The position numbers and the translations under genes were made by a program. Below the pieces are notes generated by a model. The model saw only the letters and a list, made by a program, of their open reading frames with translations. It was not told where the DNA came from and ran no database searches. From IMG/VR virus record IMGVR_UViG_3300042891_000711, positions 62,001 to 126,000 of that record: DNA of 64,000 bases; one strand, 5' to 3'. Below, piece by piece: positions 12,445-64,000 of this stretch (the stretch's first letter is position 1; the number at the start of each line of letters is the position of its first letter).

Positions 12445-13006
12445 TATGAAACAGCCAGATTGGTTTTTTAAATCAATCGATGTACCTGAACTAATTGATA
12501 TACAATTAGAACTTACAAGTATTTTACCCACATTAATTCTACCTGCTACAGAATTAACTTTCTTTTATATCAAACGAGAGCTTATACAAGACAATGTTCC
12601 AAGTTATGTAAAACTATTGGATCGGCTAAATGTTTTAGATCGATGGACTTATTCAGCCATAGTTACTACACAGGGTAATCAAGAATTTCCTATACATGTA
12701 GATGCGTTAGATTGGGAAACTAGATGTTATGGATTAAATTTGCCCATATTAAATTGCGAAGATAGTTATACAGTTTGGTATGATGCTCCTATTGATAACA
12801 CTCCTACTACATATGAAGCTGATCCAAGAAATTCTGCTAGATTTTGCAATACAGACTCAGCTGTAGAACTATGTCGAATGCCTGCAACTACGCCTGCATG
12901 GGTAAATATTTCTATTCCACACCGTCCCCAAACAAATCATACAAACTTACGAGCAATCATATCAGCTAGATTTAGCCCCGAAGTCCACGACCTAATTAAC
13001 ACTTGA
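12437..13006 (+). CDS. cupin/2OG-Fe(II) oxygenase-like protein
   Basis: PIHVD...LNLPI...IPH...R pattern. Confidence 0.55.
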   Translation: MNNMKQPDWFFKSIDVPELIDIQLELTSILPTLILPATELTFFYIKRELIQDNVPSYVKLLDRLNVLDRWTYSAIVTTQGNQEFPIHVDALDWETRCYGLNLPILNCEDSYTVWYDAPIDNTPTTYEADPRNSARFCNTDSAVELCRMPATTPAWVNISIPHRPQTNHTNLRAIISARFSPEVHDLINT

Positions 13007-13031
13007 CAAATCCTATTAATTAGTGTATACT
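13003..13031 (+). promoter_or_regulatory. sigma70-type early promoter
   Basis: TTGACA-17 bp-TATACT. Confidence 0.85.
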
Positions 13032-13057
13032 ACATATAGTTAATAAGAAAGGTAAAG

Positions 13058-13657
13058 ATGAGTTACAAAAATAAAAAAATAATATTAACGGACTGCGACG
13101 GTGTACTCTTAGACTGGGAGTATGCGTTTCATGTATGGATGCAAGAGCGTGGATATGTATTACACGAAGATGCCAAACTCACATACTACATTCATTTGAT
13201 GTACAATAACCTAGAACACGATGAAAGTAAGAAGTTAGTACGCTTGTTCAATGAAAGTGCGGCTATGGGCTTTGTACCGGCCTTGCGTGACGCTGTATAC
13301 TATGTTAAACGCTTACATGAAGAATATGGCTATGTGTTTCACTGTATCACTAGTATAAGCAAAGATGTTAATGCACAGAAGTTACGTGCAATGAATCTTA
13401 ATAAGTTGTTTGGTGCTAGTGCATTTGAAGAGATTGTTTGTTTAGATACAGGTGCGGATAAAGATGAAGCACTTGAGAAGTATAGAGCCAGTGAATTATA
13501 CTGGATCGAAGACAAACCCGAAAATGCAGACTTGGGTCATGCAATAGGATTAAAATCAATACTATTCGAACATGGGCACAACATGCATCATGAGTGCCCA
13601 TATCCTGTAGTTAAAAATTGGAAAGAAATCTTTGAGTTAATTACCCAATCGGATTAG
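13058..13657 (+). CDS. HAD-family 5'(3')-deoxyribonucleotidase-like phosphatase
   Basis: ILTDCDGVLLDW motif I, WIEDKPEN motif IV. Confidence 0.85.
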   Translation: MSYKNKKIILTDCDGVLLDWEYAFHVWMQERGYVLHEDAKLTYYIHLMYNNLEHDESKKLVRLFNESAAMGFVPALRDAVYYVKRLHEEYGYVFHCITSISKDVNAQKLRAMNLNKLFGASAFEEIVCLDTGADKDEALEKYRASELYWIEDKPENADLGHAIGLKSILFEHGHNMHHECPYPVVKNWKEIFELITQSD

Positions 13658-50990: not shown

Positions 50991-51410
50991 ATGACCAACT
51001 GGGAAACTTACGTTAAAGAATCCTATGAGCTTATTAAAGAAGCTGAAACTGCACTATCAATCACATTAGAACACAATGTTGAAGCATACGTTGTACACTT
51101 GTTCGCACACTTCCTAGACAAACCCAATGTCAATACAGAACCTGTGGGCATTAAACTAATGGCCAGTACCAATCTACCCGTAGCACAACGTAAGATATTA
51201 CTCAAAGATGTAGGCGATGAATGCTTGTTAATCAATGCTATGGAATGGAACCGACGTCGTTGGCCTACTGATACCTACTATGCTGAAATGGGGCAATCTG
51301 CTTATGTTACACGTGCTGTTGTGGCTAGGCCTGTAGAAGATATCTACGACGATTTGGCTATGGAATTTACTACAGTTACACAGGTTCTACGTAGATGTAG
51401 AATTAGTTAA
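50991..51410 (+). CDS. hypothetical protein
   Basis: ATG 50991 (MTNWETY); EAYVVHL...LKDVGDECLL...MGQSAY. Confidence 0.7.
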   Translation: MTNWETYVKESYELIKEAETALSITLEHNVEAYVVHLFAHFLDKPNVNTEPVGIKLMASTNLPVAQRKILLKDVGDECLLINAMEWNRRRWPTDTYYAEMGQSAYVTRAVVARPVEDIYDDLAMEFTTVTQVLRRCRIS

Positions 51411-52139
51411 TTTCATTAATTTCATTGCTATTAACACCCTGCAATACAACCAACTAGTATCAATTTCCCACCAATACCGATTGAAGTACGGAGTAGTTGT
51501 ATCATTATGATGATGCGCATGCAATACTTCACCGCCGCCGAATATACCCGGAAAAAATATTTTTGATTTATCCTTGCCACTATTGCCTGCATAGGTAAAC
51601 CCAATTTTATGATAGCCATAGTTTGATAATATTACAGCACAGGGATTAAAGACATAAAGAAAAAATGCGCCTATTACTGCACCAGGCACGCCAAATAATA
51701 TAGTCAGCACAGCCCACAATATAATTGTTCCCAATCTTGGATATTTACTATATAGATTAAGTTCAATCCAATCAATGGCAGTTATGATATCTGGTGCATA
51801 TAATTTCATTTCCTCGTCGCTGATATAATAAGGACGGCCTAGTTCATTGTGTTTATAGTCAAGCATCTGCGTAAATGTTAATTGATAAGGACTATGTGGG
51901 TCTAGCTCAGTATCACTATACTTGTGATGTTTTCTGTGTTGGGCGGCATAGTGTTGCATCCAATTGGGCCAAGAATACTGCATGGTAATCCATACCCAAA
52001 ATCTAAAAAAATGTTCTAGTCCAGGTGCAAAGCTAAAATAATGATGGCCTTTACCTCGATGTATGTAGATGGAAAATACCACAAATGTTACATGCATTAT
52101 TATTAAAAATGTAATTATAGCTGCGGTTAACCCAAACAT
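51387..52139 (-). CDS. membrane fatty acid desaturase-like protein 5 (delta-9-like)
   Basis: HRGKGH, HRKHH, DPHSP, GEVLHAHHH, WWEID. Confidence 0.9.
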   Translation of the reverse strand: MFGLTAAIITFLIIMHVTFVVFSIYIHRGKGHHYFSFAPGLEHFFRFWVWITMQYSWPNWMQHYAAQHRKHHKYSDTELDPHSPYQLTFTQMLDYKHNELGRPYYISDEEMKLYAPDIITAIDWIELNLYSKYPRLGTIILWAVLTILFGVPGAVIGAFFLYVFNPCAVILSNYGYHKIGFTYAGNSGKDKSKIFFPGIFGGGEVLHAHHHNDTTTPYFNRYWWEIDTSWLYCRVLIAMKLMKLTNSTST

Positions 52140-52862: not shown

Positions 52863-55526
52863 ATGAGTTATGTTGACGCACTGTTTGACAGGGCAAAAGA
52901 TCGTATCTACGTTGTAGAAAGAAAAGAAGGCATGCGCGAGTATGTCGAATACCCAGCAAATTATGTCATGTACATTGATGACCCTAAGGGTAAGTATCGC
53001 ACAGTATATGACACTCCAGTAAGTCGTTTCAGCACACGTGTTGGCAAGGAATTCCACAAAGAAACACGTATTCAATCGGGCAAGCGTATATGGGAAAGTG
53101 ATATCAATCCTGTGTTCCGTTGTTTATCAGATAACTATCTTGGTATTGATTCACCTAAACTACAAACTGCGTTTTGGGATATTGAAACAGACTTTGACCC
53201 AGCACGTGGGTATGCTCCTACCAGCGATCCGTTTAATCCTATTACAGCTATATCAGTTTACTTAGATTGGCTAGACAAGTTAGTTACCTTAGTTATTCCG
53301 CCCAAGAGCTATAGTTGGGAAACTGCACAGGAAATATGTGACCAGTATGAAAACTGTTTTATGTTTGAACGTGAAGCAGACATGTTGGATACATTCCTTA
53401 ATCTAATTGATGATGCAGATGTCTTAAGTGGCTGGAACAGTGAGGGCTATGATATTCCATATACTATTGGGCGTGTTACACGTGTGTTAAGCAAAGATGA
53501 CACTAGACGCTTTTGTCTATGGGGTCAGTATCCAAAACAGCGTGAATTTGAACGTTTTGGTGCCGCAAACATCACTTTTGACCTCATTGGCAGGGTTCAT
53601 TTAGACTACATGCAGTTGTACCGCAAATACACCTATGAAGAGCGACATAGTTATAGTTTAGATGCTATTGGTGAATATGAATTAGATGAGCGTAAGGTTG
53701 CCTATGAAGGTACATTGGATCAACTGTACAACAAAGACTTTCCTAAGTTCATTGACTATAACCGTCAGGATACTATGTTGCTAGGAAAACTAGATAAGAA
53801 GTTACGCTTCTTAGACTTAGCCAATGAACTTGCGCATGATAACACAGTGTTGCTACAGACTACAATGGGTGCTGTAGCAGTTACAGAGCAGGCTATCATC
53901 AATGAAGCACATCAACAAGGGTTAATTGTTCCTAATCGTAAGAATAGAGATGACATGGGCGATACACAAGCGGCAGGTGCTTATGTAGCCACTCCAAAAG
54001 CAGGCATGCATGATTGGATTGGTTCGGTTGATATTAACTCCCTGTATCCTAGTGCAATTCGTGCGCTTAACATGGGACCAGAAACTATTATTGGACAGAT
54101 ACGTCCAATTATGACAGACCATTATATCAATGAAAAGATGGCCAATAAGTCAAGTTTTGCAGATGCTTGGGAGGGCTTGTTCGCTACCCTAGAGTATACT
54201 GCGGTTATGGAAAGTAAACCCGGTGTTGAACTTACAATCGATTGGGAGGCTTCGGGAGAAAGTACTGTACACAGTGCGGCAGAAGTATGGACACTAATCT
54301 TCGATAGCAATCAACCATGGATACTCAGTGCTAATGGTACCATCTTTAGCTTTGAGAAAGAAGCAGTTGTTCCGGGTTTGCTAAAACGTTGGTATGCCGA
54401 ACGTAAAGAACTACAGGCTAAGATGCGTTCATGTACAGATCCAGAAGAGATTGCGTTCTGGGATAAGCGTCAGTTAGTTAAGAAGATTAACTTGAATAGC
54501 TTGTATGGTGCCTTATTGAATCCGGGCTGTCGTTTCTTTGATAAGCGTATTGGACAATCAACTACACTAACTGGTCGTACTATTGCTCGACACATGGATG
54601 CGTTTATTAATGAATGCTTCACTGGTGTATATGATCACACTGGTGATGCTATTATCTATGGTGATACAGACTCATGTTATTTTAGTGCTTGGCCTATGAT
54701 CAAAGATGAAGTTGAAGCTGGTAACATGGAGTGGAATGCCAGTATTGCTATTAAGCTGTATGACGATATTTCGGACCAGGTCAATGAAAGTTTTCCCGCA
54801 ATGATGGAACGTAGCTTTCACGTGCCACGCAGTATGGGCAGTGTGATCAAAGGCGGGCGTGAACTGGTTGCAAGTAAAGGCTTATTCATTAAGAAGAAAC
54901 GCTATGCTGTGCTGATTACAGACTTAGATGGCAAACGCATGGATACCCACGGCAAGCCTGGCAAGGTTAAGGCTATGGGCCTAGACTTGAAACGCAGTGA
55001 TACTCCAAAAGTAGTGCAGGATTTCTTAAGTGAGATTTTACTAGCGGCACTTACTGGTGTAGACAAAACTGCTATTATTGACATGGTGCGCGAGTTTAAG
55101 ATTGCGTTCCAAGATAGACCTGCTTGGGAGAAAGGTACACCCAAACGTGTAAACAATCTAACCAAGTTTACCAAAGCAGAAGAACGTGAAGGTCGTGCCA
55201 ATATGCCCGGACATGTACGTGCGGCTATGAACTGGAATAACCTAAAACGCATGCACGGTGATAACTATTCAATTAACATTGTCGATGGTATGAAAACTAT
55301 TGTGTGTAAGTTAAAAGATAATCCAATTGGATTTACCAGTGTGGGCTATCCAACAGATGGCACTCATATTCCGCAATGGTTCAAAGACTTACCTTTCGAC
55401 AATGACCTAATGGAGTCGACAATTGTTGATCAAAAAGTAGAAAACTTACTCGGTGTGCTTAAATGGAACATTACAGAAAGCACAGACATTAAAACTACAT
55501 TTGATGCATTGTTTAGTTTTGATTAA
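52863..55526 (+). CDS. family B DNA polymerase
   Basis: Exo DIET, GWNSEGYD; pol DINSLYPS, KINLNSLYG, YGDTDS, KKRY. Confidence 0.97.
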   Translation: MSYVDALFDRAKDRIYVVERKEGMREYVEYPANYVMYIDDPKGKYRTVYDTPVSRFSTRVGKEFHKETRIQSGKRIWESDINPVFRCLSDNYLGIDSPKLQTAFWDIETDFDPARGYAPTSDPFNPITAISVYLDWLDKLVTLVIPPKSYSWETAQEICDQYENCFMFEREADMLDTFLNLIDDADVLSGWNSEGYDIPYTIGRVTRVLSKDDTRRFCLWGQYPKQREFERFGAANITFDLIGRVHLDYMQLYRKYTYEERHSYSLDAIGEYELDERKVAYEGTLDQLYNKDFPKFIDYNRQDTMLLGKLDKKLRFLDLANELAHDNTVLLQTTMGAVAVTEQAIINEAHQQGLIVPNRKNRDDMGDTQAAGAYVATPKAGMHDWIGSVDINSLYPSAIRALNMGPETIIGQIRPIMTDHYINEKMANKSSFADAWEGLFATLEYTAVMESKPGVELTIDWEASGESTVHSAAEVWTLIFDSNQPWILSANGTIFSFEKEAVVPGLLKRWYAERKELQAKMRSCTDPEEIAFWDKRQLVKKINLNSLYGALLNPGCRFFDKRIGQSTTLTGRTIARHMDAFINECFTGVYDHTGDAIIYGDTDSCYFSAWPMIKDEVEAGNMEWNASIAIKLYDDISDQVNESFPAMMERSFHVPRSMGSVIKGGRELVASKGLFIKKKRYAVLITDLDGKRMDTHGKPGKVKAMGLDLKRSDTPKVVQDFLSEILLAALTGVDKTAIIDMVREFKIAFQDRPAWEKGTPKRVNNLTKFTKAEEREGRANMPGHVRAAMNWNNLKRMHGDNYSINIVDGMKTIVCKLKDNPIGFTSVGYPTDGTHIPQWFKDLPFDNDLMESTIVDQKVENLLGVLKWNITESTDIKTTFDALFSFD

Positions 55527-56665
55527 TGAATGATGTTCAGAAAAAATTAGATGAACTGATCTCACTACGAGAACAATTAGTTCATCTAACTAACAATTTT
55601 GAATTGGCAGGTATAAAAAATATCAGCGGTACATCCAATTATGTTAGTAAGGTGCAGGTTATTGCTGAACAATATCAAGATCGTCAGCTGGAAAATAAAA
55701 CAAATTTTAATAATGCAACTAATAAAGTTCGAAATAAGATTAAAGAAAGCCAACGATTGGCTAGAGAAAGTCAGTTGGCGGCTAGAGAAAGTCAACGTTT
55801 AGCTAACGAAAATATTAAAAATTTTAATAAATTAAATTTAGCTGGTACTAAACAATGTGTTAGTTCTATAGAAAGCCTAATAGGTACAATTGACGTAGAT
55901 ATTATTAACACAACTAAAGAGTTAACTAGACTAAAAACTTTAGATAAAATATATAATCAATGTAATACAGATGAATATTTAAAACATTTTTTAATAGAAT
56001 ATTTGAATAGTGACATTGTAGAAACTGTTGATGATGCACTATCAATAACTACATTTAAAATTAAATCACACTGCGATTGGAAATACCCAGGATTGCAGTT
56101 GCATCCTATGTCAGAAGAATGGATTAATTGTATGATAACAGCCGATCCATTGTATCTTACCTATCACACCGATATATCTATATATAATAAAAATTTATCA
56201 GCATTACCTGAAATTCCCGTTGCAGAATCAATTTCGACATTTACAATTGATTATCAACGACGATTAAGAATATACAACATAAAGAATCAAGATTTTTCTG
56301 CACTACCACAAGAATCATTTGGCTGTATTTCATGTTGTAATTTTTTAAATCAGTTTACTTTAGCAGATATCGAACATTATCTACGTAGGTGTTTTGAATT
56401 ATTGAAGCCGGGTGGTACTTTAATATGTACACTTAATTTTAATTATGTAATGGCGTCTGTCAACTTGGTTGAGTATGACTATTTTAAATATGCAGTTGAT
56501 AGAGTAATAGTTAAGTTTTTTGAAAATAATAGATATAAAATTATATCAACTGTTGATTTATCTGCAGGTGAATGGTCATCTGCAATATTAATAGAAGCAC
56601 AAAAACCCGGAGAATTAACTACCTCTAAGGCGCATCAGGTATTGGGTTCAATAATTGAAAAATAA
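55526..56665 (+). CDS. coiled-coil plus methyltransferase-like protein
   Basis: C-terminal LPQESFGCI...LLKPGGTLI; N-terminal coiled coil. Confidence 0.6.
   Translation: MNDVQKKLDELISLREQLVHLTNNFELAGIKNISGTSNYVSKVQVIAEQYQDRQLENKTNFNNATNKVRNKIKESQRLARESQLAARESQRLANENIKNFNKLNLAGTKQCVSSIESLIGTIDVDIINTTKELTRLKTLDKIYNQCNTDEYLKHFLIEYLNSDIVETVDDALSITTFKIKSHCDWKYPGLQLHPMSEEWINCMITADPLYLTYHTDISIYNKNLSALPEIPVAESISTFTIDYQRRLRIYNIKNQDFSALPQESFGCISCCNFLNQFTLADIEHYLRRCFELLKPGGTLICTLNFNYVMASVNLVEYDYFKYAVDRVIVKFFENNRYKIISTVDLSAGEWSSAILIEAQKPGELTTSKAHQVLGSIIEK
55745..55807 (+). repeat. 3 x 21-bp imperfect tandem repeat
   Basis: Encodes ESQRLAR-ESQLAAR-ESQRLAN. Confidence 0.85.
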
Positions 56666-56737: not shown

Positions 56738-57469
56738 ATGCGTGATCATTTATTAGACATCGTTAAAAATACTTATGGCTTAGGTATTATTGATTTAGTT
56801 AAGGTAACAGGTACAGACACAGAAACAAATATAGAAGCAATTGCTGAAGATCGGTCAGTTATTGTGCAGGCAAAAATTAACAACCCGGTGCCAGAGTTTG
56901 TTGGTACGTTTGGTATGCCAAATTTAAGCAAACTAAGCACTATTCTTAACATTCCAGAATACAAAGACGATGCTAAGATTAGCTTAACTAAACAAGATCG
57001 CAACGGTGAATCAGTTCCAGTGGGCCTACACTTTGAAAACAAAGCAGGTGACTTTAAAAACGATTATCGTTTTATGAGTTCAGAAATTGTTAACGACAAA
57101 CTTAAAACAGTTAAGTTCAAAGGTGTTAGATGGAATGTTGAATTTCAACCAACCGTTGCTAACATTCTACGTTTGAAATTCCAAGCAAGTGCCAACAGTG
57201 ACGAAACTACGTTTACTGCAAAAACAGAAGGTACAGACTTAAAATTGTTCTTTGGTGATCACAGTAGCCACGCAGGTAACTTTGTATTCCAAAGCGATGT
57301 TGCTGGTACATTAACTAAAGGTTGGTCATGGCCAGTTGCGGCAGTTATTAGTATTCTTAACTTGCCAGGTGATAAAACATTCCGTATCAGTGATGAAGGC
57401 GCGGCGCAGATTACTGTTGACAGCGGTATGGCAACTTACAACTACATCTTACCTGCACAAAGCAAATAA
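56738..57469 (+). CDS. probable sliding clamp (gp45/PCNA-like)
   Basis: 243 aa, near PolB, alternating beta/alpha pattern, C-terminal YNYILPA; clamp loader present. Confidence 0.6.
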   Translation: MRDHLLDIVKNTYGLGIIDLVKVTGTDTETNIEAIAEDRSVIVQAKINNPVPEFVGTFGMPNLSKLSTILNIPEYKDDAKISLTKQDRNGESVPVGLHFENKAGDFKNDYRFMSSEIVNDKLKTVKFKGVRWNVEFQPTVANILRLKFQASANSDETTFTAKTEGTDLKLFFGDHSSHAGNFVFQSDVAGTLTKGWSWPVAAVISILNLPGDKTFRISDEGAAQITVDSGMATYNYILPAQSK

Positions 57470-57811
57470 ATGATTAAAAACTTAGATATTACTAGTCCGC
57501 ATTTAACTGGCAACTTCATCAGTACTCCCTACGTTAACAACAATGGACAGAGTGCTGGTAGTGTGCGCTGGAATATGATGACACAACAAATGGAAGTGTC
57601 AGACGGTAATAACTGGATTAACATTAGTCAAAATGCTAGTATCGGCTTAAGCTGGACTGCCAACGAAGCTATACAATGGGTACAGGAAAAGATGAAGGAA
57701 GAGTCTGCGCTTAAAGCTAAGTTGGAGAAATACCCATCACTTAAACATGCATACGAGCAATACAAAATAATAGAAGCATTGGTACATGAGGAAGAAACAA
57801 GTGGCACATGA
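57470..57811 (+). CDS. hypothetical protein
   Basis: ORF in operon. Confidence 0.7.
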   Translation: MIKNLDITSPHLTGNFISTPYVNNNGQSAGSVRWNMMTQQMEVSDGNNWINISQNASIGLSWTANEAIQWVQEKMKEESALKAKLEKYPSLKHAYEQYKIIEALVHEEETSGT

Positions 57812-59474
57812 AATAGATAATTTAACCGCAAAACAACTAGACTATGCAGTGTTCTTACCAGCACTTAGTGGTTTCTATGCTACATACGTAGGCAAACAAC
57901 GTTTTCCAGATCCTGTAAAAGGTTTGTATGTTGATTCTACTCGTATGCCGACAGACTTTGAAAATGGTATGGAAGGTCTTAACTGGCTTAATCCAGATGC
58001 GGCATACTTTCCTTATCAATGGAGTCTATATTCAGCAGGGCATGCTGAGTTAGATGTTAATAAGTTTAGTCCTAAAGAAGATATGGTTCGTAATCGTGAT
58101 AGATCACGTAGTTTTATCCTAGGTGACTCTGGTGGTTTCCAAATTGGTAAAGGTGTTTGGGAAGGTGATTGGAAGAATCCTAACTGTCCTAAAGCACAAA
58201 AGAAACGTGAGCTAGTTCTTACTTGGATGGACGCCTACATGGACTATGGTATGTGTTTGGATATTCCAGCTTGGGTAGCTCGTAGTCCGAATGGTCGAAA
58301 AGCAACTGGTATTAATACATACGAAGAAGCTGTACAGGGCACTTATATTAATAACGATTGGTTTATTAACAATCGTAATGGTAACTGTAAGTTCTTAAAC
58401 GTATTACAGGGTGAGAATCACGCAGACGCAGACGATTGGTATGATCGTATGAAGAAGTATTGTGATCCTAAACAGTATCCGGGTCGTCATTTTAATGGCT
58501 GGGCCATGGGTGGGCAGAACATGTGTGATGTACACTTGGTATTGCGCAGACTTGTTGCCTTACGTTTTGATGGCCTATTAGAAGAAGGTCTACATGATTG
58601 GATGCACTTCTTGGGTACAAGTAAACTAGAGTGGGCATGCTTATTGACTGACATCCAACGTGCTGTGCGTAAGTATCATAATCCTAACTTTACAATCAGC
58701 TTTGACTGTGCAAGTCCATTCCTTGCTAGTGCAAACGGGCAAATTTATACCCAGACTGAAGTTGAAGATGGTAAGAAATGGGTATATCGTATGGTACCTA
58801 GTGTAGACAATAAGAAGTATGCATTAGATACACGTAGTTTCCGTGATGCTGTATTACAAGATGGTAAATTTAAATCTTTTACAGAAAGTCCTGTTAGCGC
58901 ACGTATTAAAATTAATGATGTTTGTGTATATCACGATGGTGTACGCAAAACTGCTGCAGAATTGAACGGTGAGACATTTGATGTAACTAATCAAGATCAT
59001 TATAGCACGCCGCCTGCACTTAATAAGATTAACAAGGTTGGTAAGACTAGTTGGGATAGCTTTGCCTATGCCATACAAATGGGTCATAATGTTTGGAGTC
59101 ATTTAACTAGTGTGCAAGAAGCAAATAGACAATATGACCAAGGTATTCGTCCAGCGATGCTGTCAGCTATTACTGCTGATAAAAAATCACACAGAGCATA
59201 TGATTTAATTTACTTTAGAGATATCGTTGATGCTATATTTGCTATTGATAATAGAGCAGATGCAGAAGCAATGGTAGAACATTATAATCAATATTGGATG
59301 AATATCCCAGGTTCGCGTGGTGCAGTTGGTAAGAAGACTATGAATACCAGTACTACATTTGGTAATTTATTTGAAGAAGTAGCGGCGCCCGAAGTTGAAG
59401 AAGAACATCATATAGATGATAGCGGACTCGACGAAACAAATCTTAATAACTTAGAAGCAGGATTGGAGGACTAG
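57801..59474 (+). CDS. TGT/DpdA-like guanine transglycosylase
   Basis: LGDSGGFQI, MCLDIP, NVLQG, GWAMGG, HFLGT, SFDCASP; GTG start after GAGGA. Confidence 0.8.
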   Translation: MAHEIDNLTAKQLDYAVFLPALSGFYATYVGKQRFPDPVKGLYVDSTRMPTDFENGMEGLNWLNPDAAYFPYQWSLYSAGHAELDVNKFSPKEDMVRNRDRSRSFILGDSGGFQIGKGVWEGDWKNPNCPKAQKKRELVLTWMDAYMDYGMCLDIPAWVARSPNGRKATGINTYEEAVQGTYINNDWFINNRNGNCKFLNVLQGENHADADDWYDRMKKYCDPKQYPGRHFNGWAMGGQNMCDVHLVLRRLVALRFDGLLEEGLHDWMHFLGTSKLEWACLLTDIQRAVRKYHNPNFTISFDCASPFLASANGQIYTQTEVEDGKKWVYRMVPSVDNKKYALDTRSFRDAVLQDGKFKSFTESPVSARIKINDVCVYHDGVRKTAAELNGETFDVTNQDHYSTPPALNKINKVGKTSWDSFAYAIQMGHNVWSHLTSVQEANRQYDQGIRPAMLSAITADKKSHRAYDLIYFRDIVDAIFAIDNRADAEAMVEHYNQYWMNIPGSRGAVGKKTMNTSTTFGNLFEEVAAPEVEEEHHIDDSGLDETNLNNLEAGLED

Positions 59475-59475
59475 C

Positions 59476-59664
59476 ATGGACGCAGACAAATTACCTCATC
59501 ATATTGCACAGTTAGAAGAAAAACACCGTGTAATCAAACAACAAATTGCTGAAGGGTACACTCATTATTTAGATGATGCACATCTAGGCAAAATGAAGTT
59601 AGAAAAATTAATAATCAAACGTCAAATCGTAGAAGCAAAAACAAAACTTAAGGCACAACAATGA
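59476..59664 (+). CDS. small coiled-coil protein (DUF465/YdcH-like)
   Basis: LEEKHRVI...KLEKLIIKRQI; GGAGG RBS. Confidence 0.6.
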   Translation: MDADKLPHHIAQLEEKHRVIKQQIAEGYTHYLDDAHLGKMKLEKLIIKRQIVEAKTKLKAQQ

Positions 59665-60548
59665 AAAGTTTAATCGTAGGTATGGGTATTGGTAACTTGT
59701 ATAATGAAGTATTGACTAACTTAGGTCATGAGATTGTAACAGTTGACTTAGACCCAAGTAAAGCAATGTACACAAATGTGGAAGATGCTATTGCGGCACA
59801 TGAATATTTTGATACTGTACATATTTGTACCCCAAATTTTACACATGAACCTATTGCTAGAGCTGTCGCGCCATATGCCAAGATTGTGTTTGTAGAAAAA
59901 CCAGGATTTAAAACTTGGTTAGAATGGAAGTCTACTTGCGAAGCATTTCCACACACACGCTTTATGATGGTTAAGAATAATCAATGGCGTGACAACATTA
60001 AAGAGTTACGCAGACTTGCTAGTAATTCCGTTACTATTAACTTATGTTGGATTAACAAGAATCGCGTACCTAGTCCTGGTACATGGTTTACCACTAAAGA
60101 ACTAGCCTACGGTGGAGTTAGTCGTGATTTAATGACACACTTACTAAGTTTATTCCAAGCACTTAACTATTCATACAAGTCCACACCACTTATCAGCGCC
60201 AGTGCAGAACAACGTTATAGCTTAGAAGATGTTAGCGATACAGAATACGGCGCAGTTAAAGCAGATGGCATCTACGACGTAGACGATGTATGTAAGTTCA
60301 TATTCCAAGGTCCGCAACGTACATGGAATTTAATTGCTGACTGGCGCAGTACTAGTATTGAAGAACGTGCTATTACTTTTAAAATGGTAGATGGTACAAC
60401 TGAACGATTTGAGCTAGGTCTGTGCCCAGCAGAAGCATATCAGGCAATGATTGCGGATGCAGTAGCAAACGTAGACAACGATACGTTTTGGGCAAACCAA
60501 CTTGAATTAGATGTATGGATTCATGACATGGTTGAAGTGCAACTTTGA
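59661..60548 (+). CDS. Gfo/Idh/MocA family oxidoreductase
   Basis: IVGMGIG, ICTPNFTH, VFVEKP, GGVSRDLMTH. Confidence 0.88.
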   Translation: MKSLIVGMGIGNLYNEVLTNLGHEIVTVDLDPSKAMYTNVEDAIAAHEYFDTVHICTPNFTHEPIARAVAPYAKIVFVEKPGFKTWLEWKSTCEAFPHTRFMMVKNNQWRDNIKELRRLASNSVTINLCWINKNRVPSPGTWFTTKELAYGGVSRDLMTHLLSLFQALNYSYKSTPLISASAEQRYSLEDVSDTEYGAVKADGIYDVDDVCKFIFQGPQRTWNLIADWRSTSIEERAITFKMVDGTTERFELGLCPAEAYQAMIADAVANVDNDTFWANQLELDVWIHDMVEVQL

Positions 60549-61726
60549 GTTTGACAAGAAATGTTATAATTAGAAATACCCTAGCAGGAGTCACTACAAG
60601 TTTGGCTATGGTGCCAGAAGTAGTGGCTTTTGCTTTATTAGCACATGTTAATCCTCTAGTAGGGTTGTATGCCGCATTTATACTAGGCTTAGTAGCTGCC
60701 GTGTTTGGCGGCAGGCCAGGTTTAATTAGCGGCGGCGCAGGTAGTCTTGCAGTAGTCAGCGTAGCACTTGTGGTAACACACGGTGTTGAATACCTATTTG
60801 CCTGTATAGTACTCATGGGTATACTGCAACTGGCATTTGGTTATTTTAGATTGGGTAAGTTGATTAAATTAGTCAGTCCTACTGTAATGACTGGCTTTGT
60901 TAATGGACTTGCGTTGGTTATTTTTCTTGCGCAGTTTCATCAGCTTAAAACGAATGGAATGTGGCTACAAGGACTGCAATTATATACTACTGTAGGATTA
61001 GTAGCATTAACAGTATTGGCAGTATTGTTAGCTACAAAACTTATTAAACGTATTCCGGCAAGTTTAGTCGGTATTGTTGTTGCCACTACAGCGGCATTAA
61101 CATTTAATCTAGACACACATTATGTCAAGGATATTGCAACTATATCTGGTGCATTTCCTAGTTTTCATATACCTAATGTGCCATTTACATGGCAAACCTT
61201 AGCTATCATTGCTCCATACTCGTTTATACTTGCATCCATTGGTTTAATAGAAACATTACTAACTGCACAATTAGTAGATGATTATGTGCATCAGCATAAA
61301 CCCATTGGTAAAACGCACCCAAACAAAGAAAGTATGGCACAAGGCGCAGGCAACTTACTTACTGGATTATTTGGCGGCATGGGCGGCTGTGCTATGATTG
61401 GGCAAACTGTAATTAACTTGGAAGCTGGCGGCTTCGATAGATTAGCTGGCATAGTGCAATCGCTGTGTATACTTGCTTATATTCTATTTGCTAGTTTTAT
61501 AATTGAAAATATACCAATAGCGGCATTAGTCGGTGTAATGTTTGTTGTTTGCTATCATACGTTTGACTGGAAAAGTCTAACTCTTAATCAACCTAAAGAA
61601 AATATCTTATTGATATTGACAGTGACCACGCTAACTGTTATACTTAATTTAGCTTATGCAGTTTTAATAGGTATCGCATTAACTAGTTTAATACATTATT
61701 GGCAACATGTTAACACAAAGGAATAG
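60545..61726 (+). CDS. SulP/SLC26 anion transporter lacking STAS domain
   Basis: LAGVTTSLAMVPEVVAFA, GGRPGLISG, NKESMAQGAGN, GGCAMIGQT. Confidence 0.9.
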   Translation: MSLTRNVIIRNTLAGVTTSLAMVPEVVAFALLAHVNPLVGLYAAFILGLVAAVFGGRPGLISGGAGSLAVVSVALVVTHGVEYLFACIVLMGILQLAFGYFRLGKLIKLVSPTVMTGFVNGLALVIFLAQFHQLKTNGMWLQGLQLYTTVGLVALTVLAVLLATKLIKRIPASLVGIVVATTAALTFNLDTHYVKDIATISGAFPSFHIPNVPFTWQTLAIIAPYSFILASIGLIETLLTAQLVDDYVHQHKPIGKTHPNKESMAQGAGNLLTGLFGGMGGCAMIGQTVINLEAGGFDRLAGIVQSLCILAYILFASFIIENIPIAALVGVMFVVCYHTFDWKSLTLNQPKENILLILTVTTLTVILNLAYAVLIGIALTSLIHYWQHVNTKE

Positions 61727-61728
61727 CA

Positions 61729-62625
61729 GTGAACGTAAAACTATTATCTACAGATGGTAAAGGTACATTCCAAGAAATGGATTGGGATAAACCAGCAATT
61801 ACCGACGACGAAATTGAAGTGCGGGCAGTATTAACAGGTGTATGCCGCAGTGACATTGATATGATGCAGGGTGAGTTTGGTCCATTACCTATTAGTATGC
61901 ACGGACACGAAGGACTTGGACAAGTTACTAACGTTGGCGCCAATATTAAAGATGTCAGCATTGGTGATTACGTAGCCACCCGCGGTGAGCCTGCTTATGC
62001 AGATATGTACAATGTTAGGGCACGAGAATATGTCAGTGTGCCCACAGCAGAACCTAAATACATATTAGAACCTGTTGCTTGTGGTATTAATGTAGTCTAT
62101 CAAAACTTGCGCGAAGTTGCCGAACGTTCTGGTGAAGGTCGTCGCTTGTTAATATTGGGCAGTGGCTTCCTTGCATGGGTAGCGTATAACACCTTGTTAA
62201 TTAATCATTTAGAGTTTGATATCACAGTAATTGGTCGCAGTAATCAAGACTTGTGGCAGGGTAAATTATCTCAAGAAATTACTGGTGTTTATGATGTTAT
62301 TATTGATTTAACTGAACGCACTGATTATCTACAAGGCGACTGTGTTGCAAATAATGGTTTAATCATTATTGGTACTGACAAACATATTAATCAAACATTT
62401 GGACAATTGATTTGGAAAGCCGTTACTATTAGTTTCCCAAGCCCACGAACACCACGCTTTTATGAAGCAATGGTGTTAGCACGTGATTGGGTTGCTTCTG
62501 GTCAATTAACCGTTGACAAGTTCTGGACAAAGTCGTATAATAGAAAGATAGAGTGGCAATCTGCATTTGCAGATGGCGTTAATAGACCAGCAGGCTACAG
62601 TAGAGGATACATTAAGTGGGATTAA
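61729..62625 (+). CDS. zinc-dependent MDR alcohol/sugar dehydrogenase
   Basis: GVCRSD, GHEGLG, LEPVAC, ILGSG. Confidence 0.88.
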   Translation: MNVKLLSTDGKGTFQEMDWDKPAITDDEIEVRAVLTGVCRSDIDMMQGEFGPLPISMHGHEGLGQVTNVGANIKDVSIGDYVATRGEPAYADMYNVRAREYVSVPTAEPKYILEPVACGINVVYQNLREVAERSGEGRRLLILGSGFLAWVAYNTLLINHLEFDITVIGRSNQDLWQGKLSQEITGVYDVIIDLTERTDYLQGDCVANNGLIIIGTDKHINQTFGQLIWKAVTISFPSPRTPRFYEAMVLARDWVASGQLTVDKFWTKSYNRKIEWQSAFADGVNRPAGYSRGYIKWD

Positions 62626-63134
62626 ACACAGAAGAACGTCAGGAAGTAGTATATTTTACAGGATATGAAGTAGAGCATACAATATGTTATGGTATGAAAA
62701 CATTGTTTGTAGTGGGCACTCCACCTGTAGAAGAAATATTTGAAAAAGCTCGGGCAAATGAATGTAGTCACATTTACTTTGGTACTAGTCAAAGTTTTAA
62801 TCCGCAAGCAATGACCTATGAAGAATACAAGCCCTGGGATGATGTTATTCTTGAATGTTTAAAGAATGACTACTGGGTCAGCTTAGACTTTGGTGTAGAA
62901 CACATCGAAGGTGTTATTGAAAGCGGGTATTCTGAATACGCTAGATTTGTTCCTATGATCAGTGTTAAATTACCCTACATTAATCAACTTAACTACAATG
63001 CTACACTTAAACTTGATGACATTACGTGGGGTAAAACTAATCCTGGCGTGTGGACACATCATTTACAAACGCTAATGGGTAAAGATAAATTTACCTATTG
63101 GGATCAATATACTCAAGATACAGAGATCAAATAA
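62616..63134 (+). CDS. hypothetical protein
   Basis: YFTGYEVEHT...TLFVVG...HIYFG; GAGGA RBS. Confidence 0.7.
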   Translation: MGLNTEERQEVVYFTGYEVEHTICYGMKTLFVVGTPPVEEIFEKARANECSHIYFGTSQSFNPQAMTYEEYKPWDDVILECLKNDYWVSLDFGVEHIEGVIESGYSEYARFVPMISVKLPYINQLNYNATLKLDDITWGKTNPGVWTHHLQTLMGKDKFTYWDQYTQDTEIK

Positions 63135-63154
63135 TCAAATACAGAAAGGTTGAT

Positions 63155-63643
63155 ATGAACTTACAATTAGTTACAGAAATCTTAAAAAGCAAACATAATA
63201 ATTTAATGAAATTAGTACCAACATCTGCTAAACTTACTAGTCGAGATTATAATGAAGTTTTTGAAACTAACTATCCATGGTATCAAGTAGTCATCGGACT
63301 AAGCGGAAAATGCACTGACAGTAAAAAAAGAGCAGCCAAAATGGGATTTGACTATAATTTAGATTTAAGATATATGACAGATCTATGGATTAAACAAAAA
63401 GGACGATGTCAATTAACTGGTCAAATTATGAGTTTTCAACCAGGAAACCAATGGAATAAAAACCCGCTATCGTGTTCAATTGACCGAATTGATAACAGCC
63501 AAGGGTATATCAAAGGTAATGTTAGATTACTCACTCACTGGGCTAACAATGCTAAAAGCACATGGGATTTTAATGTCTTTGAGAGTATGATTAAAAGTTC
63601 TTCAATAAATTTGGGATTAATAAATGATACAAGCAGAACGTGA
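63155..63643 (+). CDS. HNH-like (homing-type) endonuclease
   Basis: KQKGRCQLTG...SIDRIDNSQGYIKGNVRL...AN.AK; start reassigned to 63155. Confidence 0.75.
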   Translation: MNLQLVTEILKSKHNNLMKLVPTSAKLTSRDYNEVFETNYPWYQVVIGLSGKCTDSKKRAAKMGFDYNLDLRYMTDLWIKQKGRCQLTGQIMSFQPGNQWNKNPLSCSIDRIDNSQGYIKGNVRLLTHWANNAKSTWDFNVFESMIKSSSINLGLINDTSRT

Positions 63644-64000
63644 ACAACTAGAACGTATTAAGTCCAATGGAATACGTACAACTTATATTAAAGTTAGAAC
63701 TGAATTTGAAGGGTTTCATTACTACCCTAACGCAGGTACTATTGATTCGCGTATCAAATTTCTTGAGAATGAACATCGACATATATTCAAAGTTGAGGTG
63801 AAAATATCAGTTACGCACCTCGACCGTGAATTAGAATTTTTCTTAGTTAAATGGGCTTTACAAGAATTTATTAAAGCAGGTAATCAAAATCACAAATCGT
63901 GTGAAATGATTGCTGTTAACATTTTAGAAAATCATTTAATACCATTGTATGGTAATAGATCTTATACTGTAGTAGTATCCGAGGATGGGGAATCAGATGG
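63624..64000 (+). CDS. QueD/PTPS-like protein, 3' truncated (not in ORF track)
   Basis: MIQAERE...FEGFHYYP...EHRHIFKVEV...SCEMIA...VSEDGE. Confidence 0.65.
   Translation, partial: MIQAEREQLERIKSNGIRTTYIKVRTEFEGFHYYPNAGTIDSRIKFLENEHRHIFKVEVKISVTHLDRELEFFLVKWALQEFIKAGNQNHKSCEMIAVNILENHLIPLYGNRSYTVVVSEDGESD

What the first reader, a model, noticed from the sequence alone, without database searches (positions are those of the whole stretch)
57801..64000. Deazaguanine-type modification locus interleaved with sugar-type oxidoreductases
Seen: TGT/DpdA-like gene, Gfo/Idh/MocA oxidoreductase, SulP, Zn-MDR dehydrogenase, unknown gene, HNH and QueD-like gene, tightly coupled downstream of polymerase and clamp. 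Established: phage DpdA with FolE/QueD/QueE/QueC inserts 7-deazaguanines into DNA; Gfo and MDR enzymes are not part of that canonical pathway. Inference: a possibly new hypermodified base, e.g. a sugar- or cyclitol-decorated deazaguanine.
Basis: partly seen in the sequence, partly recalled or inferred. Interest (0 to 1): 0.7.

Follow-up and report, generated by a model that had tools for sequence, protein, structure and literature searches.

The report
Jumbo-phage deazaguanine DNA modification locus
A lake-water jumbo phage carries a very divergent guanine-swapping enzyme, the genes for making 7-deazaguanine, a conserved sugar-adding enzyme and an optional oxidoreductase-transporter cassette, so its DNA probably holds a modified, perhaps sugar-decorated, guanine that could be tested directly in the cultured relative PA5oct.

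Summary
Only the 'clamp' label, just outside the interval, is wrong: that gene looks like a methyltransferase.

- **Pathway.** The 'QueD-like' gene is a DpdL, the proposed 7-carboxy-7-deazaguanine decarboxylase. FolE, QueD and a QueE-like gene lie just past the window. QueC is absent, also from a complete 329-kb relative. This predicts a 7-deazaguanine-type DNA base.
- **Conserved core.** In relatives, in Pseudomonas phage PA5oct and in Acidovorax phage ACP17, the core is the transglycosylase, the 172-aa unknown, DpdL and a GT4-like glycosyltransferase.
- **Cassette.** Gfo-(SulP)-MDR occurs in about one in nine of the closest relatives, always in the same slot. In PA5oct it moved together with the 172-aa gene.

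The sugar-decoration idea therefore has independent genomic support, but there is no chemical evidence, and the cassette could be an unrelated metabolic module. I rate it a new variant of a known kind, interest about 0.7.

The parts
52863..55526 (+). Family-B DNA polymerase; upstream context that opens the conserved gene block.
   Evidence: PF00136 E 4e-34 and PF03104 E 4e-16. It is 48-71% identical to the two halves of the PA5oct polymerase.
55526..56665 (+). 379-aa SAM-methyltransferase-like protein.
   Evidence: Weak Methyltransf_11/12/23/25 hits at residues 237-306. Relatives hold a methyltransferase-like or a UDP-glucose-dehydrogenase-like gene in this slot.
56738..57469 (+). 243-aa conserved protein, homologue of a PA5oct virion structural protein.
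   Evidence: phrog_12062 E 1e-33. It is 38% identical to PA5oct gp314, found in the virion by mass spectrometry according to that record. It is present in nearly all related loci.
57786..59474 (+). 562-aa DpdA-like guanine transglycosylase, the founding member here of an unnamed, very divergent TGT-superfamily branch.
   Evidence: - Model: AF2 pLDDT 91.
- Sequence: hhalign to E. coli Tgt, 92.6%, E 4.5e-7, pairs D114 with D89 and D307 with the nucleophile D264. Both are invariant in 88 family members.
- Nearest named family: hhalign to the DpdA2 of ACP17, 96%, E 2e-9.
- Family size: 955 representatives at 50% identity.
59476..59664 (+). 62-aa coiled-coil-like ORF with weak DUF465 likeness, conserved after the transglycosylase in many relatives.
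   Evidence: PF04325 E 1e-3, below the cut-off. Homologues are found in most loci.
59661..60548 (+). Gfo/Idh/MocA NAD(P)-dependent oxidoreductase, first gene of the accessory cassette.
   Evidence: PF01408 E 4e-7. GMGIGN, VEKPG and GGVSRDLMTH motifs. 1764 homologous clusters. It keeps a fixed position after the TGT-like gene in 38 of 41 viral loci. PA5oct gp362 is 31% identical.
60545..61726 (+). STAS-less SulP-family anion permease, inserted between Gfo and MDR.
   Evidence: PF00916 E 5e-49 over profile positions 5-363 of 380, with no STAS domain. More than 120 clusters are at least 70% identical. It lies in the same Gfo-SulP-MDR slot in 320-360 kb contigs and in L110. It is absent from the 90%-identical relatives L016/L105.
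61729..62625 (+). Medium-chain (Zn-type) dehydrogenase/reductase, last gene of the accessory cassette.
   Evidence: ADH_N E 1e-10. GVCRSD and HGHEGLG catalytic-zinc motifs, a GSGFLA Rossmann motif, and no structural-zinc lobe. PA5oct gp363 is 39% identical, E 1e-69.
62616..63134 (+). 172-aa conserved protein of unknown function ('p172'), a core partner of the transglycosylase.
   Evidence: Present in every related locus with enough sequence. 31 residues are invariant. Homologues are PA5oct gp364 (43%) and ACP17 gp122 (32%), the latter directly upstream of that phage's DpdA2. AF2 pLDDT 84. No significant fold match, only recurrent weak QueE likeness that sequence comparison does not support.
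63098..63643 (+). HNH/endonuclease VII-type homing endonuclease; a mobile insert, not part of the pathway.
   Evidence: phrog_3322 E 1e-21 and phrog_1035 E 3e-13. Found only in the near-identical loci. Lake-water contigs join 63132 to 63623 without it.
63624..64000 (+). dpdL, a QueD paralogue and the proposed 7-carboxy-7-deazaguanine decarboxylase. The gene ends 28 bases past the window (L092:6624-7028).
   Evidence: LENEHRHIF matches LxxxHRHxF, the DpdL signature of PMC10516641. tblastn hits phiST CGPG_00067 and ACP17 gp125, the two named DpdL proteins, and 27 further phage records.

Best explanation
The interval is the first half of a roughly 17-kb DNA-modification module in the replication region of a freshwater jumbo phage related to Pseudomonas phage PA5oct.

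**Shown by sequence and fold**
- The module encodes FolE, QueD and a QueE-like enzyme, which together make 7-carboxy-7-deazaguanine (CDG) from GTP.
- It encodes a DpdL, the QueD paralogue proposed to decarboxylate CDG to 7-deazaguanine.
- It has no QueC.
- It encodes a TGT-fold enzyme with both catalytic aspartates intact.

**Inferred**
- The TGT-fold enzyme is the phage's DpdA. After replication it swaps guanine in phage DNA for the deazaguanine base.
- This protects the DNA from restriction, as in Cellulophaga phage phiST.
- It also accounts for the G-dependent restriction resistance reported for PA5oct.

**Inferred with less confidence**
- The conserved GT4-like glycosyltransferase, the mini-DegT and the 172-aa protein act in the same pathway and decorate the base further, probably with a sugar or amino sugar.
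- The purine phosphoribosyltransferase salvages the released guanine or handles the free deazapurine.

**Least certain**
- Gfo-(SulP)-MDR is an optional tailoring cassette that works with the 172-aa protein. It would oxidise or reduce the sugar or its donor, with the permease importing a precursor anion.
- On this reading, lineages with and without the cassette carry different variants of the modification.
For: **TGT fold and catalytic residues.**

**Pathway genes.**
- FolE: PF01227 E 9e-38.
- QueD: PF01242 E 1e-26, with the CRHLHGH motif.
- QueE-like: TIGR03365 E 9e-13, and 31% identity to the PA5oct gene annotated as QueE.
- DpdL motif and homology.
- No QueC here or in a complete relative with terminal repeats.

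**Conserved context.**
- In 80 related loci the order polymerase, structural gene, TGT-like, p172, DpdL, GT, FolE, PRTase, QueE is kept.
- PA5oct has TGT-like, GT and DpdL adjacent, with QueE four genes on.
- ACP17 has p172, DpdA2, GT, DpdL and QueE in a row.
- 17 of 29 phage records with DpdL also hold the GT homologue. In the six groups read (PA5oct, ACP17, Phosso, X1, BUDD, BCSR5) it lies within about 3 kb of DpdL.

**Sugar genes.**
- GT: EX7E invariant and Glycos_transf_1 hits in 7 of 17 members, with GT4 neighbours in the Atlas.
- The mini-DegT keeps its lysine motif. In other viruses it is fused to a GT.

**Cassette position.**. It relocated together with p172 in PA5oct.

**No pyrimidine route.** ThyA is canonical and there is no Tet/JBP gene, so nothing points to a hydroxymethyl-pyrimidine acceptor for the GT.

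Against: - There is no chemical or read-level evidence of modification. Only assembled contigs were available.
- The enzyme is too far from any tested DpdA for activity or substrate to be transferred by homology: 14% identity to TGT, no BLAST hit to DpdA1-4, and no conserved Zn-site cysteines.
- DpdL's decarboxylase activity has never been shown, and the ACP17 pair failed in E. coli (PMC10516641).
- 7-Deazaguanine offers no hydroxyl for a glycosyltransferase.
- The cassette is absent from 71 of the 80 closest loci and from ACP17.
- Joints in contigs from the same lakes suggest cassette-less variants at similar depth, though the joints rest on only 29 letters per side. The cassette therefore looks dispensable.
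- A membrane permease is not an expected part of base synthesis.
- Two loci have Gfo-MDR without a TGT-like gene within 6 kb upstream.
- The QueE-like protein lacks the usual third cluster cysteine.
Confidence: 0.6

Rival explanations
1. The deazaguanine core is real, but Gfo-(SulP)-MDR is an auxiliary metabolic module. It would import an anion or oxidise a host sugar or polyol to support infection. It sits in a permissive, recombination-prone slot and has nothing to do with the DNA base.
For: - SulP is a membrane transporter.
- The cassette is missing from 71 of the 80 closest loci and from ACP17.
- Joints in contigs from the same lakes suggest variants without it.
- The same slot holds unrelated genes in relatives, such as a halogenase-like enzyme, DUF6445 and a radical SAM enzyme.
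- The closest curated families are catabolic sugar or inositol dehydrogenases, all far below their cut-offs.
Against: - Position and translational coupling are kept across lineages whose TGT-like genes are only 40-70% identical.
- In PA5oct, Gfo-MDR moved 26 kb away together with p172, a gene that otherwise sits beside DpdA-type genes.
- The locus and its relatives are rich in other sugar-tailoring genes.
Confidence: 0.3
2. The modified base enters DNA as a nucleotide, not by base exchange. The phosphoribosyltransferase would turn the free deazapurine into a nucleotide that the phage polymerase incorporates. The TGT-like protein would then have another role, for example on tRNA.
For: - A purine-type PRTase with an intact PRPP motif is conserved in the module.
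- MazG-like genes occur in a relative and in phiST.
- The module lies next to the polymerase.
- From general knowledge, deazapurine nucleoside antibiotic pathways use such a PRTase on CDG.
Against: - The TGT-like protein keeps both catalytic aspartates invariant across 88 members.
- It occupies the place of DpdA2 in the ACP17-type gene order.
- Every deazaguanine-DNA phage examined so far encodes a DpdA (PMC10516641).
- The genome has no QueA, QueF or QueC to make a tRNA-type base.
Confidence: 0.12
3. The glycosyltransferase, the mini-DegT and the oxidoreductases glycosylate something other than DNA, such as virion proteins or host envelope. The DNA base would then be plain 7-deazaguanine, as in phiST.
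For: - 7-Deazaguanine has no obvious acceptor group.
- A virion structural gene lies just upstream.
- From general knowledge, phage-encoded virion glycosylation exists.
Against: The GT lies between or beside DpdA-type and DpdL genes in six separate phage groups, including ACP17, where it is flanked on both sides by deazaguanine genes.
Confidence: 0.25

Closest known systems
dDG systems of Cellulophaga phage phiST (DpdA3) and Acidovorax phage ACP17 (DpdA2): FolE, QueD, QueE, DpdL and DpdA without QueC (PMC10516641)
   Same: The pathway gene set is the same and QueC is likewise absent. The DpdL has the same LxxxHRHxF motif. ACP17 also shares the p172 homologue and the GT homologue in the same order.
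   Different: The transglycosylase cannot be found from DpdA2 or DpdA3 by BLAST and is 100-300 residues longer. The module also holds a PRTase, a mini-DegT, a B12-radical SAM enzyme and the Gfo-SulP-MDR cassette. phiST has no GT.
Pseudomonas jumbo phage PA5oct (Wroclawvirus), whose DNA carries a modified G of unknown chemistry (PMC12191111)
   Same: The replication module is syntenic. Homologues are gp316 (TGT-like, 37%), gp317 (GT, 41%), gp318 (DpdL, 33%), gp322 (QueE, 31%), and gp362-364 (Gfo 31%, MDR 39%, p172 43%).
   Different: In PA5oct the Gfo-MDR-p172 block lies 26 kb from the transglycosylase. There is no SulP. The MDR has altered zinc-site residues. The published work named only QueE and a PTPS, not a transglycosylase.
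tRNA-guanine transglycosylases (bacterial Tgt, eukaryotic QTRT1, archaeal ArcTGT)
   Same: They share the TIM-barrel fold, the DSGGFQ and FDC motifs and both catalytic aspartates.
   Different: Identity is about 14%. There is no Pfam TGT match and no conserved zinc-binding cysteines. The C-terminal region is extra. The genomic context is DNA replication and the DpdL/GT genes.
Glycosylated DNA bases of phages (glucosyl-hydroxymethylcytosine of T4 and related glycan hypermodifications) and glycosylated queuosine in tRNA
   Same: A phage-encoded GT-B glycosyltransferase sits in a DNA-modification module. Among structural neighbours of the GT family is the tRNA-queuosine mannosyltransferase family, at TM 0.74.
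   Different: No hydroxymethyl-pyrimidine pathway is present. No glycosylated deazaguanine in DNA was found in the papers searched.

Membership tests
TGT/DpdA superfamily | TGT-type (beta/alpha)8 barrel fold | tested here: met
TGT/DpdA superfamily | Catalytic aspartates: the nucleophile (E. coli D264) and the general acid/base (E. coli D89) | tested here: met
   hhalign pairs D307 with D264 and D114 with D89. Both are invariant in 88 members.
TGT/DpdA superfamily | Zinc-binding CxCxxC...H subdomain of tRNA TGTs | tested here: not met
   No cysteine is invariant or nearly invariant in the family alignment. The hhalign match ends before that region.
TGT/DpdA superfamily | Match to the Pfam TGT model PF01702 | tested here: not met
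   No hit at E up to 10 for the protein or for the six-frame genome. One of 88 members hits at E 0.009.
TGT/DpdA superfamily | Guanine exchange in DNA (DpdA) rather than tRNA | not testable with these tools
   Only context speaks for DNA: DpdL, GT and QueE neighbours, and the restriction resistance of PA5oct.
DpdA2 (Vibrio phage nt-1, VH7D, ACP17) | Sequence similarity detectable to the type members | tested here: not met
   tblastn of the 562-aa protein finds only PA5oct-like phages, Phosso and one Vibrio jumbo phage. tblastn of ACP17 DpdA2 finds nt-1 and VH7D but not PA5oct. Only the profile comparison links them, at 96%, E 2e-9.
DpdA3 (phiST, Campylobacter phages) | Sequence or profile similarity over the barrel | tested here: not met
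   hhalign reaches 85% over 83 columns only. In BFVD the phiST protein ranks 26th, E 7.5e-3.
DpdA4 (DUF6610, archaeal viruses) | Match to PF20314 | tested here: not met
   No Pfam family at E up to 10.
DpdL (QueD paralogue, proposed CDG decarboxylase) | LxxxHRHxF in place of QueD's CxxxHGH | tested here: met
   LENEHRHIF at residues 47-55. The genome's true QueD has CRHLHGH.
DpdL (QueD paralogue, proposed CDG decarboxylase) | Homology to phiST CGPG_00067 and ACP17 gp125; found with FolE, QueD and QueE and without QueC | tested here: met
   tblastn E 1e-7 and 3e-11. Pathway genes. No QueC.
DpdL (QueD paralogue, proposed CDG decarboxylase) | Decarboxylation of CDG | not testable with these tools
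   Also unproven in the literature (PMC10516641).
Canonical preQ0 pathway (FolE, QueD, QueE, QueC) | QueC present | tested here: not met
   No PF06508 match in this record (62% complete) or in the complete 329-kb relative G001.
Gfo/Idh/MocA oxidoreductases | N-terminal Rossmann domain with GxGxxG, an EKP motif and a GGx3Dx3H catalytic motif | tested here: met
   PF01408 31 bits, above the 24-bit cut-off. The motifs can be read.
Medium-chain Zn dehydrogenases (MDR) | GroES-like domain with Cys/His/Glu catalytic-zinc ligands and a Rossmann domain | tested here: met
   ADH_N 42 bits, above the 23.5-bit cut-off. GVCRSD, HGHE and GSGFLA motifs. The structural-zinc lobe is absent.
SulP anion transporters | Sulfate_transp membrane domain plus a C-terminal STAS domain | tested here: not met
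   The membrane domain is complete (E 5e-49) but no STAS domain is present. The whole phage family is 380-410 aa long.
GT4-type GT-B glycosyltransferases (gene just past the window) | GT-B fold and EX7E motif | tested here: met
   E273 and E281 are invariant. Glycos_transf_1 or Glyco_transf_4 hits occur in 7 and 4 of 17 members, all below the cut-offs. Atlas neighbours are GT4 families at TM 0.7-0.8, but for a related model, not this protein.

The most novel reading that the evidence does not exclude
The virion DNA of these freshwater jumbo phages, of PA5oct and of ACP17 carries a glycosylated 7-deazaguanine. This would be a sugar or amino sugar joined to the deazapurine, for example a C-glycoside at C7 freed by decarboxylation. 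A fifth, unnamed DpdA branch would install the base, and the conserved GT4-like enzyme, the 172-aa protein and the mini-DegT would elaborate it. The Gfo-(SulP)-MDR cassette would then give a lineage-specific variant of the sugar. This would be the first glycosylated purine-type base in DNA.
Probability: 0.25. Interest if true: 0.9.

Novelty: new variant of a known kind. Interest (0 to 1): 0.7.

Why it matters
- **Coverage of the DpdA signature.** 7-Deazaguanine DNA modifications are a main way for phages to escape restriction and some CRISPR enzymes. DpdA is used as their signature gene. This branch is invisible to Pfam and to BLAST from the four viral DpdA subfamilies (DpdA1-4). Yet it has more than 7,700 protein clusters at 90% identity in metagenomes, so surveys based on known DpdA models miss a large group of abundant lake phages.
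- **PA5oct.** The analysis names the candidate genes for the unexplained G modification of this cultured therapeutic-candidate phage: gp316, gp317, gp318 and gp362-364.
- **Unexplained partners.** A glycosyltransferase and a 172-aa protein are conserved partners of DpdL. This may explain why DpdL plus DpdA alone gave no product in E. coli.
- **If the sugar reading holds.** It would add a new chemical class of DNA base and new enzymes for DNA labelling.

Tried and rejected
**Led nowhere**
- Sequence-only searches of the 562-aa protein and of its 88-member profile against PDB chains found nothing.
- Pfam, NCBIfam and PHROGs gave nothing for the 562-aa protein.
- megablast of the region against phage records found nothing.
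- The predicted complex of the transglycosylase with p172 gave 'no answer', which is neither for nor against binding.
- Supplementary tables of PMC10516641 are not held, so ACP17's subfamily had to be inferred from tblastn.
- Only assembled contigs exist for the runs holding this phage, so no read-level sign of modification could be sought.

**p172**
- Foldseek against PDB and AFDB, a wide VIA-align search and the Atlas gave no significant match.
- The recurring weak QueE likeness is not supported by profile comparison, at 0.4% probability, so I do not call it a QueE paralogue.

**Ideas rejected**
- The p172 subtype does not track the presence of Gfo-MDR. It seemed so, but both subtypes occur with the cassette.
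- SulP is not a one-off recent insertion. It recurs in the same slot in distant 320-360 kb genomes.
- The 194-aa DegT is not a broken gene. It belongs to a conserved viral family of that length.
- The GT does not serve a hydroxymethyl-pyrimidine pathway. ThyA is canonical and there is no Tet/JBP gene.

Full report
**Where the window lies.** The window is bases 62001-126000 of a 218,902-bp viral contig, estimated 62% complete. At least 22 lake-water metagenome runs hold near-identical sequence. Complete or nearly complete relatives are 329-343 kb, one of them with direct terminal repeats. This is a freshwater jumbo phage. Its replication region is syntenic with Pseudomonas jumbo phage PA5oct.

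**The observation.** From 57786 to the end of the window there is an unbroken run of + strand ORFs whose stops and starts overlap or abut.
- A 562-aa protein.
- A 62-aa ORF.
- A Gfo/Idh/MocA oxidoreductase: PF01408 E 4e-7, with GxGxxG, EKP and GGx3Dx3H motifs.
- A SulP membrane domain without STAS: PF00916 E 5e-49.
- A zinc-type MDR dehydrogenase: ADH_N E 1e-10, with GVCRSD and HGHE motifs.
- A 172-aa unknown.
- An HNH/endonuclease VII-type nuclease.
- A 134-aa gene that runs 28 bases past the window.

The upstream polymerase is a family-B enzyme. It is followed by a homologue of a PA5oct virion protein. The seven genes inside the interval are confirmed. The 'clamp' is not.

**The TGT-like protein.**
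- It matches no Pfam, NCBIfam or PHROG model, and no PDB chain by sequence, even as an 88-member profile.
- It carries DSGGFQ and FDCASP motifs.
- A model built on the family alignment is confident, at pLDDT 91.
- Foldseek puts Z. mobilis tRNA-guanine transglycosylase first, at probability 1.0.
- Profile comparison with E. coli Tgt (92.6%, E 4.5e-7) pairs D114 with the general acid/base D89 and D307 with the nucleophile D264. Both are invariant in the family.
- The zinc-site cysteines of tRNA TGTs are not conserved.

Among viral models, the nearest named ones are large phage TGT/DpdA proteins, including Vibrio phage nt-1. The phiST protein ranks far lower. Profile comparison links the family best to the ACP17 protein (96%, E 2e-9). 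That protein is a DpdA2, because it finds nt-1 and VH7D by tblastn. The link to phiST DpdA3 is partial, and there is no DUF6610 (DpdA4) match. BLAST does not connect the family to any named DpdA.

The family is large. There are 955 representatives at 50% identity and more than 7,700 clusters at 90% identity, all unnamed. No paper in the library names a fifth DpdA branch.

**Beyond the window.** Downstream lie, in order:
- a NUMOD3 homing endonuclease on the other strand;
- a 365-405-aa protein;
- a 194-aa DegT-like protein;
- FolE (E 9e-38);
- a SnoaL-like protein;
- a purine-type phosphoribosyltransferase;
- a B12-radical SAM methyltransferase-like enzyme;
- a QueE-like protein;
- a flap endonuclease and an exonuclease;
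- a canonical QueD with CRHLHGH.

QueC is absent from this record and from a complete relative.

The in-window 'QueD-like' gene reads LENEHRHIF. This is the LxxxHRHxF signature that defines DpdA's partner DpdL, the proposed CDG decarboxylase of phiST and ACP17. It finds exactly those proteins by tblastn. The gene set is thus that of the 7-deazaguanine (dDG) branch described in PMC10516641, not the preQ0 branch.

**What is conserved.**
- In 80 viral contigs whose TGT-like gene is 64-100% identical, one order is kept: polymerase, structural gene, TGT-like, 172-aa protein, DpdL, the 365-aa protein, usually the mini-DegT, FolE, PRTase, QueE and the flap endonuclease.
- The 365-aa protein is a GT-B glycosyltransferase. 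Its E-x7-E motif is invariant. Seven of 17 members touch Glycos_transf_1. Its Atlas neighbours are GT4 families.
- The GT is 33% identical to ACP17 gp124 and 41% to PA5oct gp317.
- Of 29 phage records with a DpdL, 17 also hold this GT. In the six groups read (PA5oct, ACP17, Phosso, X1, BUDD, BCSR5) it lies within about 3 kb of DpdL.
- The 172-aa protein also has homologues in PA5oct (gp364) and in ACP17 (gp122, directly upstream of DpdA2).

The conserved core is therefore a DpdA-type enzyme, the 172-aa protein, the GT and DpdL, together with the CDG genes. The published account of the ACP17 cluster does not discuss the GT or the 172-aa gene, and it reports that DpdA plus DpdL gave no dDG in E. 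coli.

**The oxidoreductases and the permease.**
- Gfo and MDR are present in only 9 of the 80 closest loci.
- Searching from Gfo instead gives 41 viral loci at 48-100% identity. MDR follows directly in 39; the other two loci end there. The TGT-like gene is upstream in 38. The 172-aa gene, DpdL and the GT follow.
- Two loci have Gfo, MDR and a p172-like gene without a TGT-like gene within 6 kb.
- SulP is missing from 90%-identical relatives. It recurs between Gfo and MDR in a lineage whose TGT-like gene is only 42% identical, and in 320-360 kb contigs. Its STAS-less family numbers more than 120 clusters at 70% identity or above.
- In PA5oct, Gfo (gp362), MDR (gp363, 39%, E 1e-69) and the 172-aa homologue (gp364) are contiguous, 26 kb from the transglycosylase. 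The pair thus travels with the 172-aa gene.
- Lake contigs include joints that skip 59666-62775 (the cassette) and 63132-63623 (the HNH gene), at depths similar to the full form. The joints rest on only 29 letters per side.
- The slots around these genes hold other tailoring-type genes in relatives. Examples are a halogenase-like flavoenzyme, DUF6445, a radical SAM enzyme, an SDR epimerase, a UDP-glucose-dehydrogenase-like gene and a cytidylyltransferase.

**How it most likely works.**
- *Shown:* the fold and catalytic residues of the transglycosylase, the pathway genes to CDG, the DpdL signature, the absence of QueC, and the conserved gene order.
- *Inferred from the known systems:* CDG is made from GTP and decarboxylated, and the base is exchanged for guanine in replicated phage DNA. 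This gives restriction resistance. It matches the report that PA5oct DNA resists several enzymes with G in their sites and is attacked by nucleases that sense modified G (PMC12191111).
- *Inferred with less support:* the GT, the mini-DegT and the 172-aa protein elaborate the base. The mini-DegT keeps its PLP-lysine motif and in other viruses is fused to a GT.
- *Least certain:* Gfo-(SulP)-MDR is an optional tailoring set.

The main difficulty is chemical: 7-deazaguanine has no hydroxyl to glycosylate. A C- or N-glycoside, an ester on CDG, or a target other than DNA all remain open. No hydroxymethyl-pyrimidine route exists in the genome to supply another acceptor.

**Rivals.**
- The cassette may be a metabolic module in a permissive slot.
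- The PRTase may point to a nucleotide-level route.
- The sugar genes may act on virion proteins.

Each is set out with its evidence in the Rival explanations section. None is excluded by computation.

**Verdict.** Its deazaguanine reading is supported and made sharper: a DpdL-type pathway without QueC, with a new DpdA-like branch. Its sugar hypothesis gains support from genes it could not see but remains untested. I rate this a new variant of a known kind, of clear interest because PA5oct offers an immediate experimental test.

Noticed in passing
window 55526-56665 (+): The gene after the polymerase looks like a SAM methyltransferase, not a clamp. In relatives the same slot holds a 310-aa methyltransferase-like gene or a 258-aa UDP-glucose/GDP-mannose dehydrogenase-like gene.
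   Followed up: partly
window 63098-63643 (+) and genome 126003-126740 (-), i.e. L092:7003-7740: Two homing-endonuclease genes (HNH/EndoVII type and NUMOD3 type) flank dpdL. Both are present only in the closest relatives. A variant without the HNH gene occurs in the same lakes.
   Followed up: partly
L092:11696-13738 (genome 130696-132738): A 680-aa B12-binding radical SAM enzyme of the KedN5 C-methyltransferase type (E 1e-48, below the family cut-off) sits between the PRTase and QueE. Relatives have other genes there.
   Followed up: no
L092:9130-9714 (genome 128130-128714): A 194-aa 'mini-DegT' keeps the PLP-lysine motif but is half the length of normal sugar aminotransferases. It belongs to a viral family of 192-200 aa that in other viruses is fused to a glycosyltransferase and a methyltransferase.
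   Followed up: partly
L092:13763-14623 (genome 132763-133623): The QueE-like protein has the QueE N-terminal motif and C35-x3-C39, but the third cysteine of the usual radical-SAM triad is missing. The next cysteine is C74.
   Followed up: no
window 51387-52139 (-): A 250-aa ORF on the opposite strand has a weak fatty-acid-desaturase match (E 8e-6, below the Pfam cut-off).
   Followed up: no
L096:10785-12326 and 12891-13541; L142:11527-11967; L143:10907-11377: Relatives carry further enzymes inside the same module: a tryptophan-halogenase-like flavoenzyme, DUF6445, a fatty-acid-hydroxylase-like gene and a cytidylyltransferase. This points to a hypervariable tailoring region.
   Followed up: no
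window 57801-59665: Two metatranscriptome runs from one freshwater sample hold contigs about 91% identical to the transglycosylase gene. These contigs join straight to the 172-aa gene, skipping the cassette. DNA carry-over in those libraries cannot be excluded.
   Followed up: partly
L002:1611-6837 (PA5oct): The PA5oct family-B polymerase is split by a Hef-like homing endonuclease into two annotated genes. In this phage it is a single 887-aa ORF.
   Followed up: no
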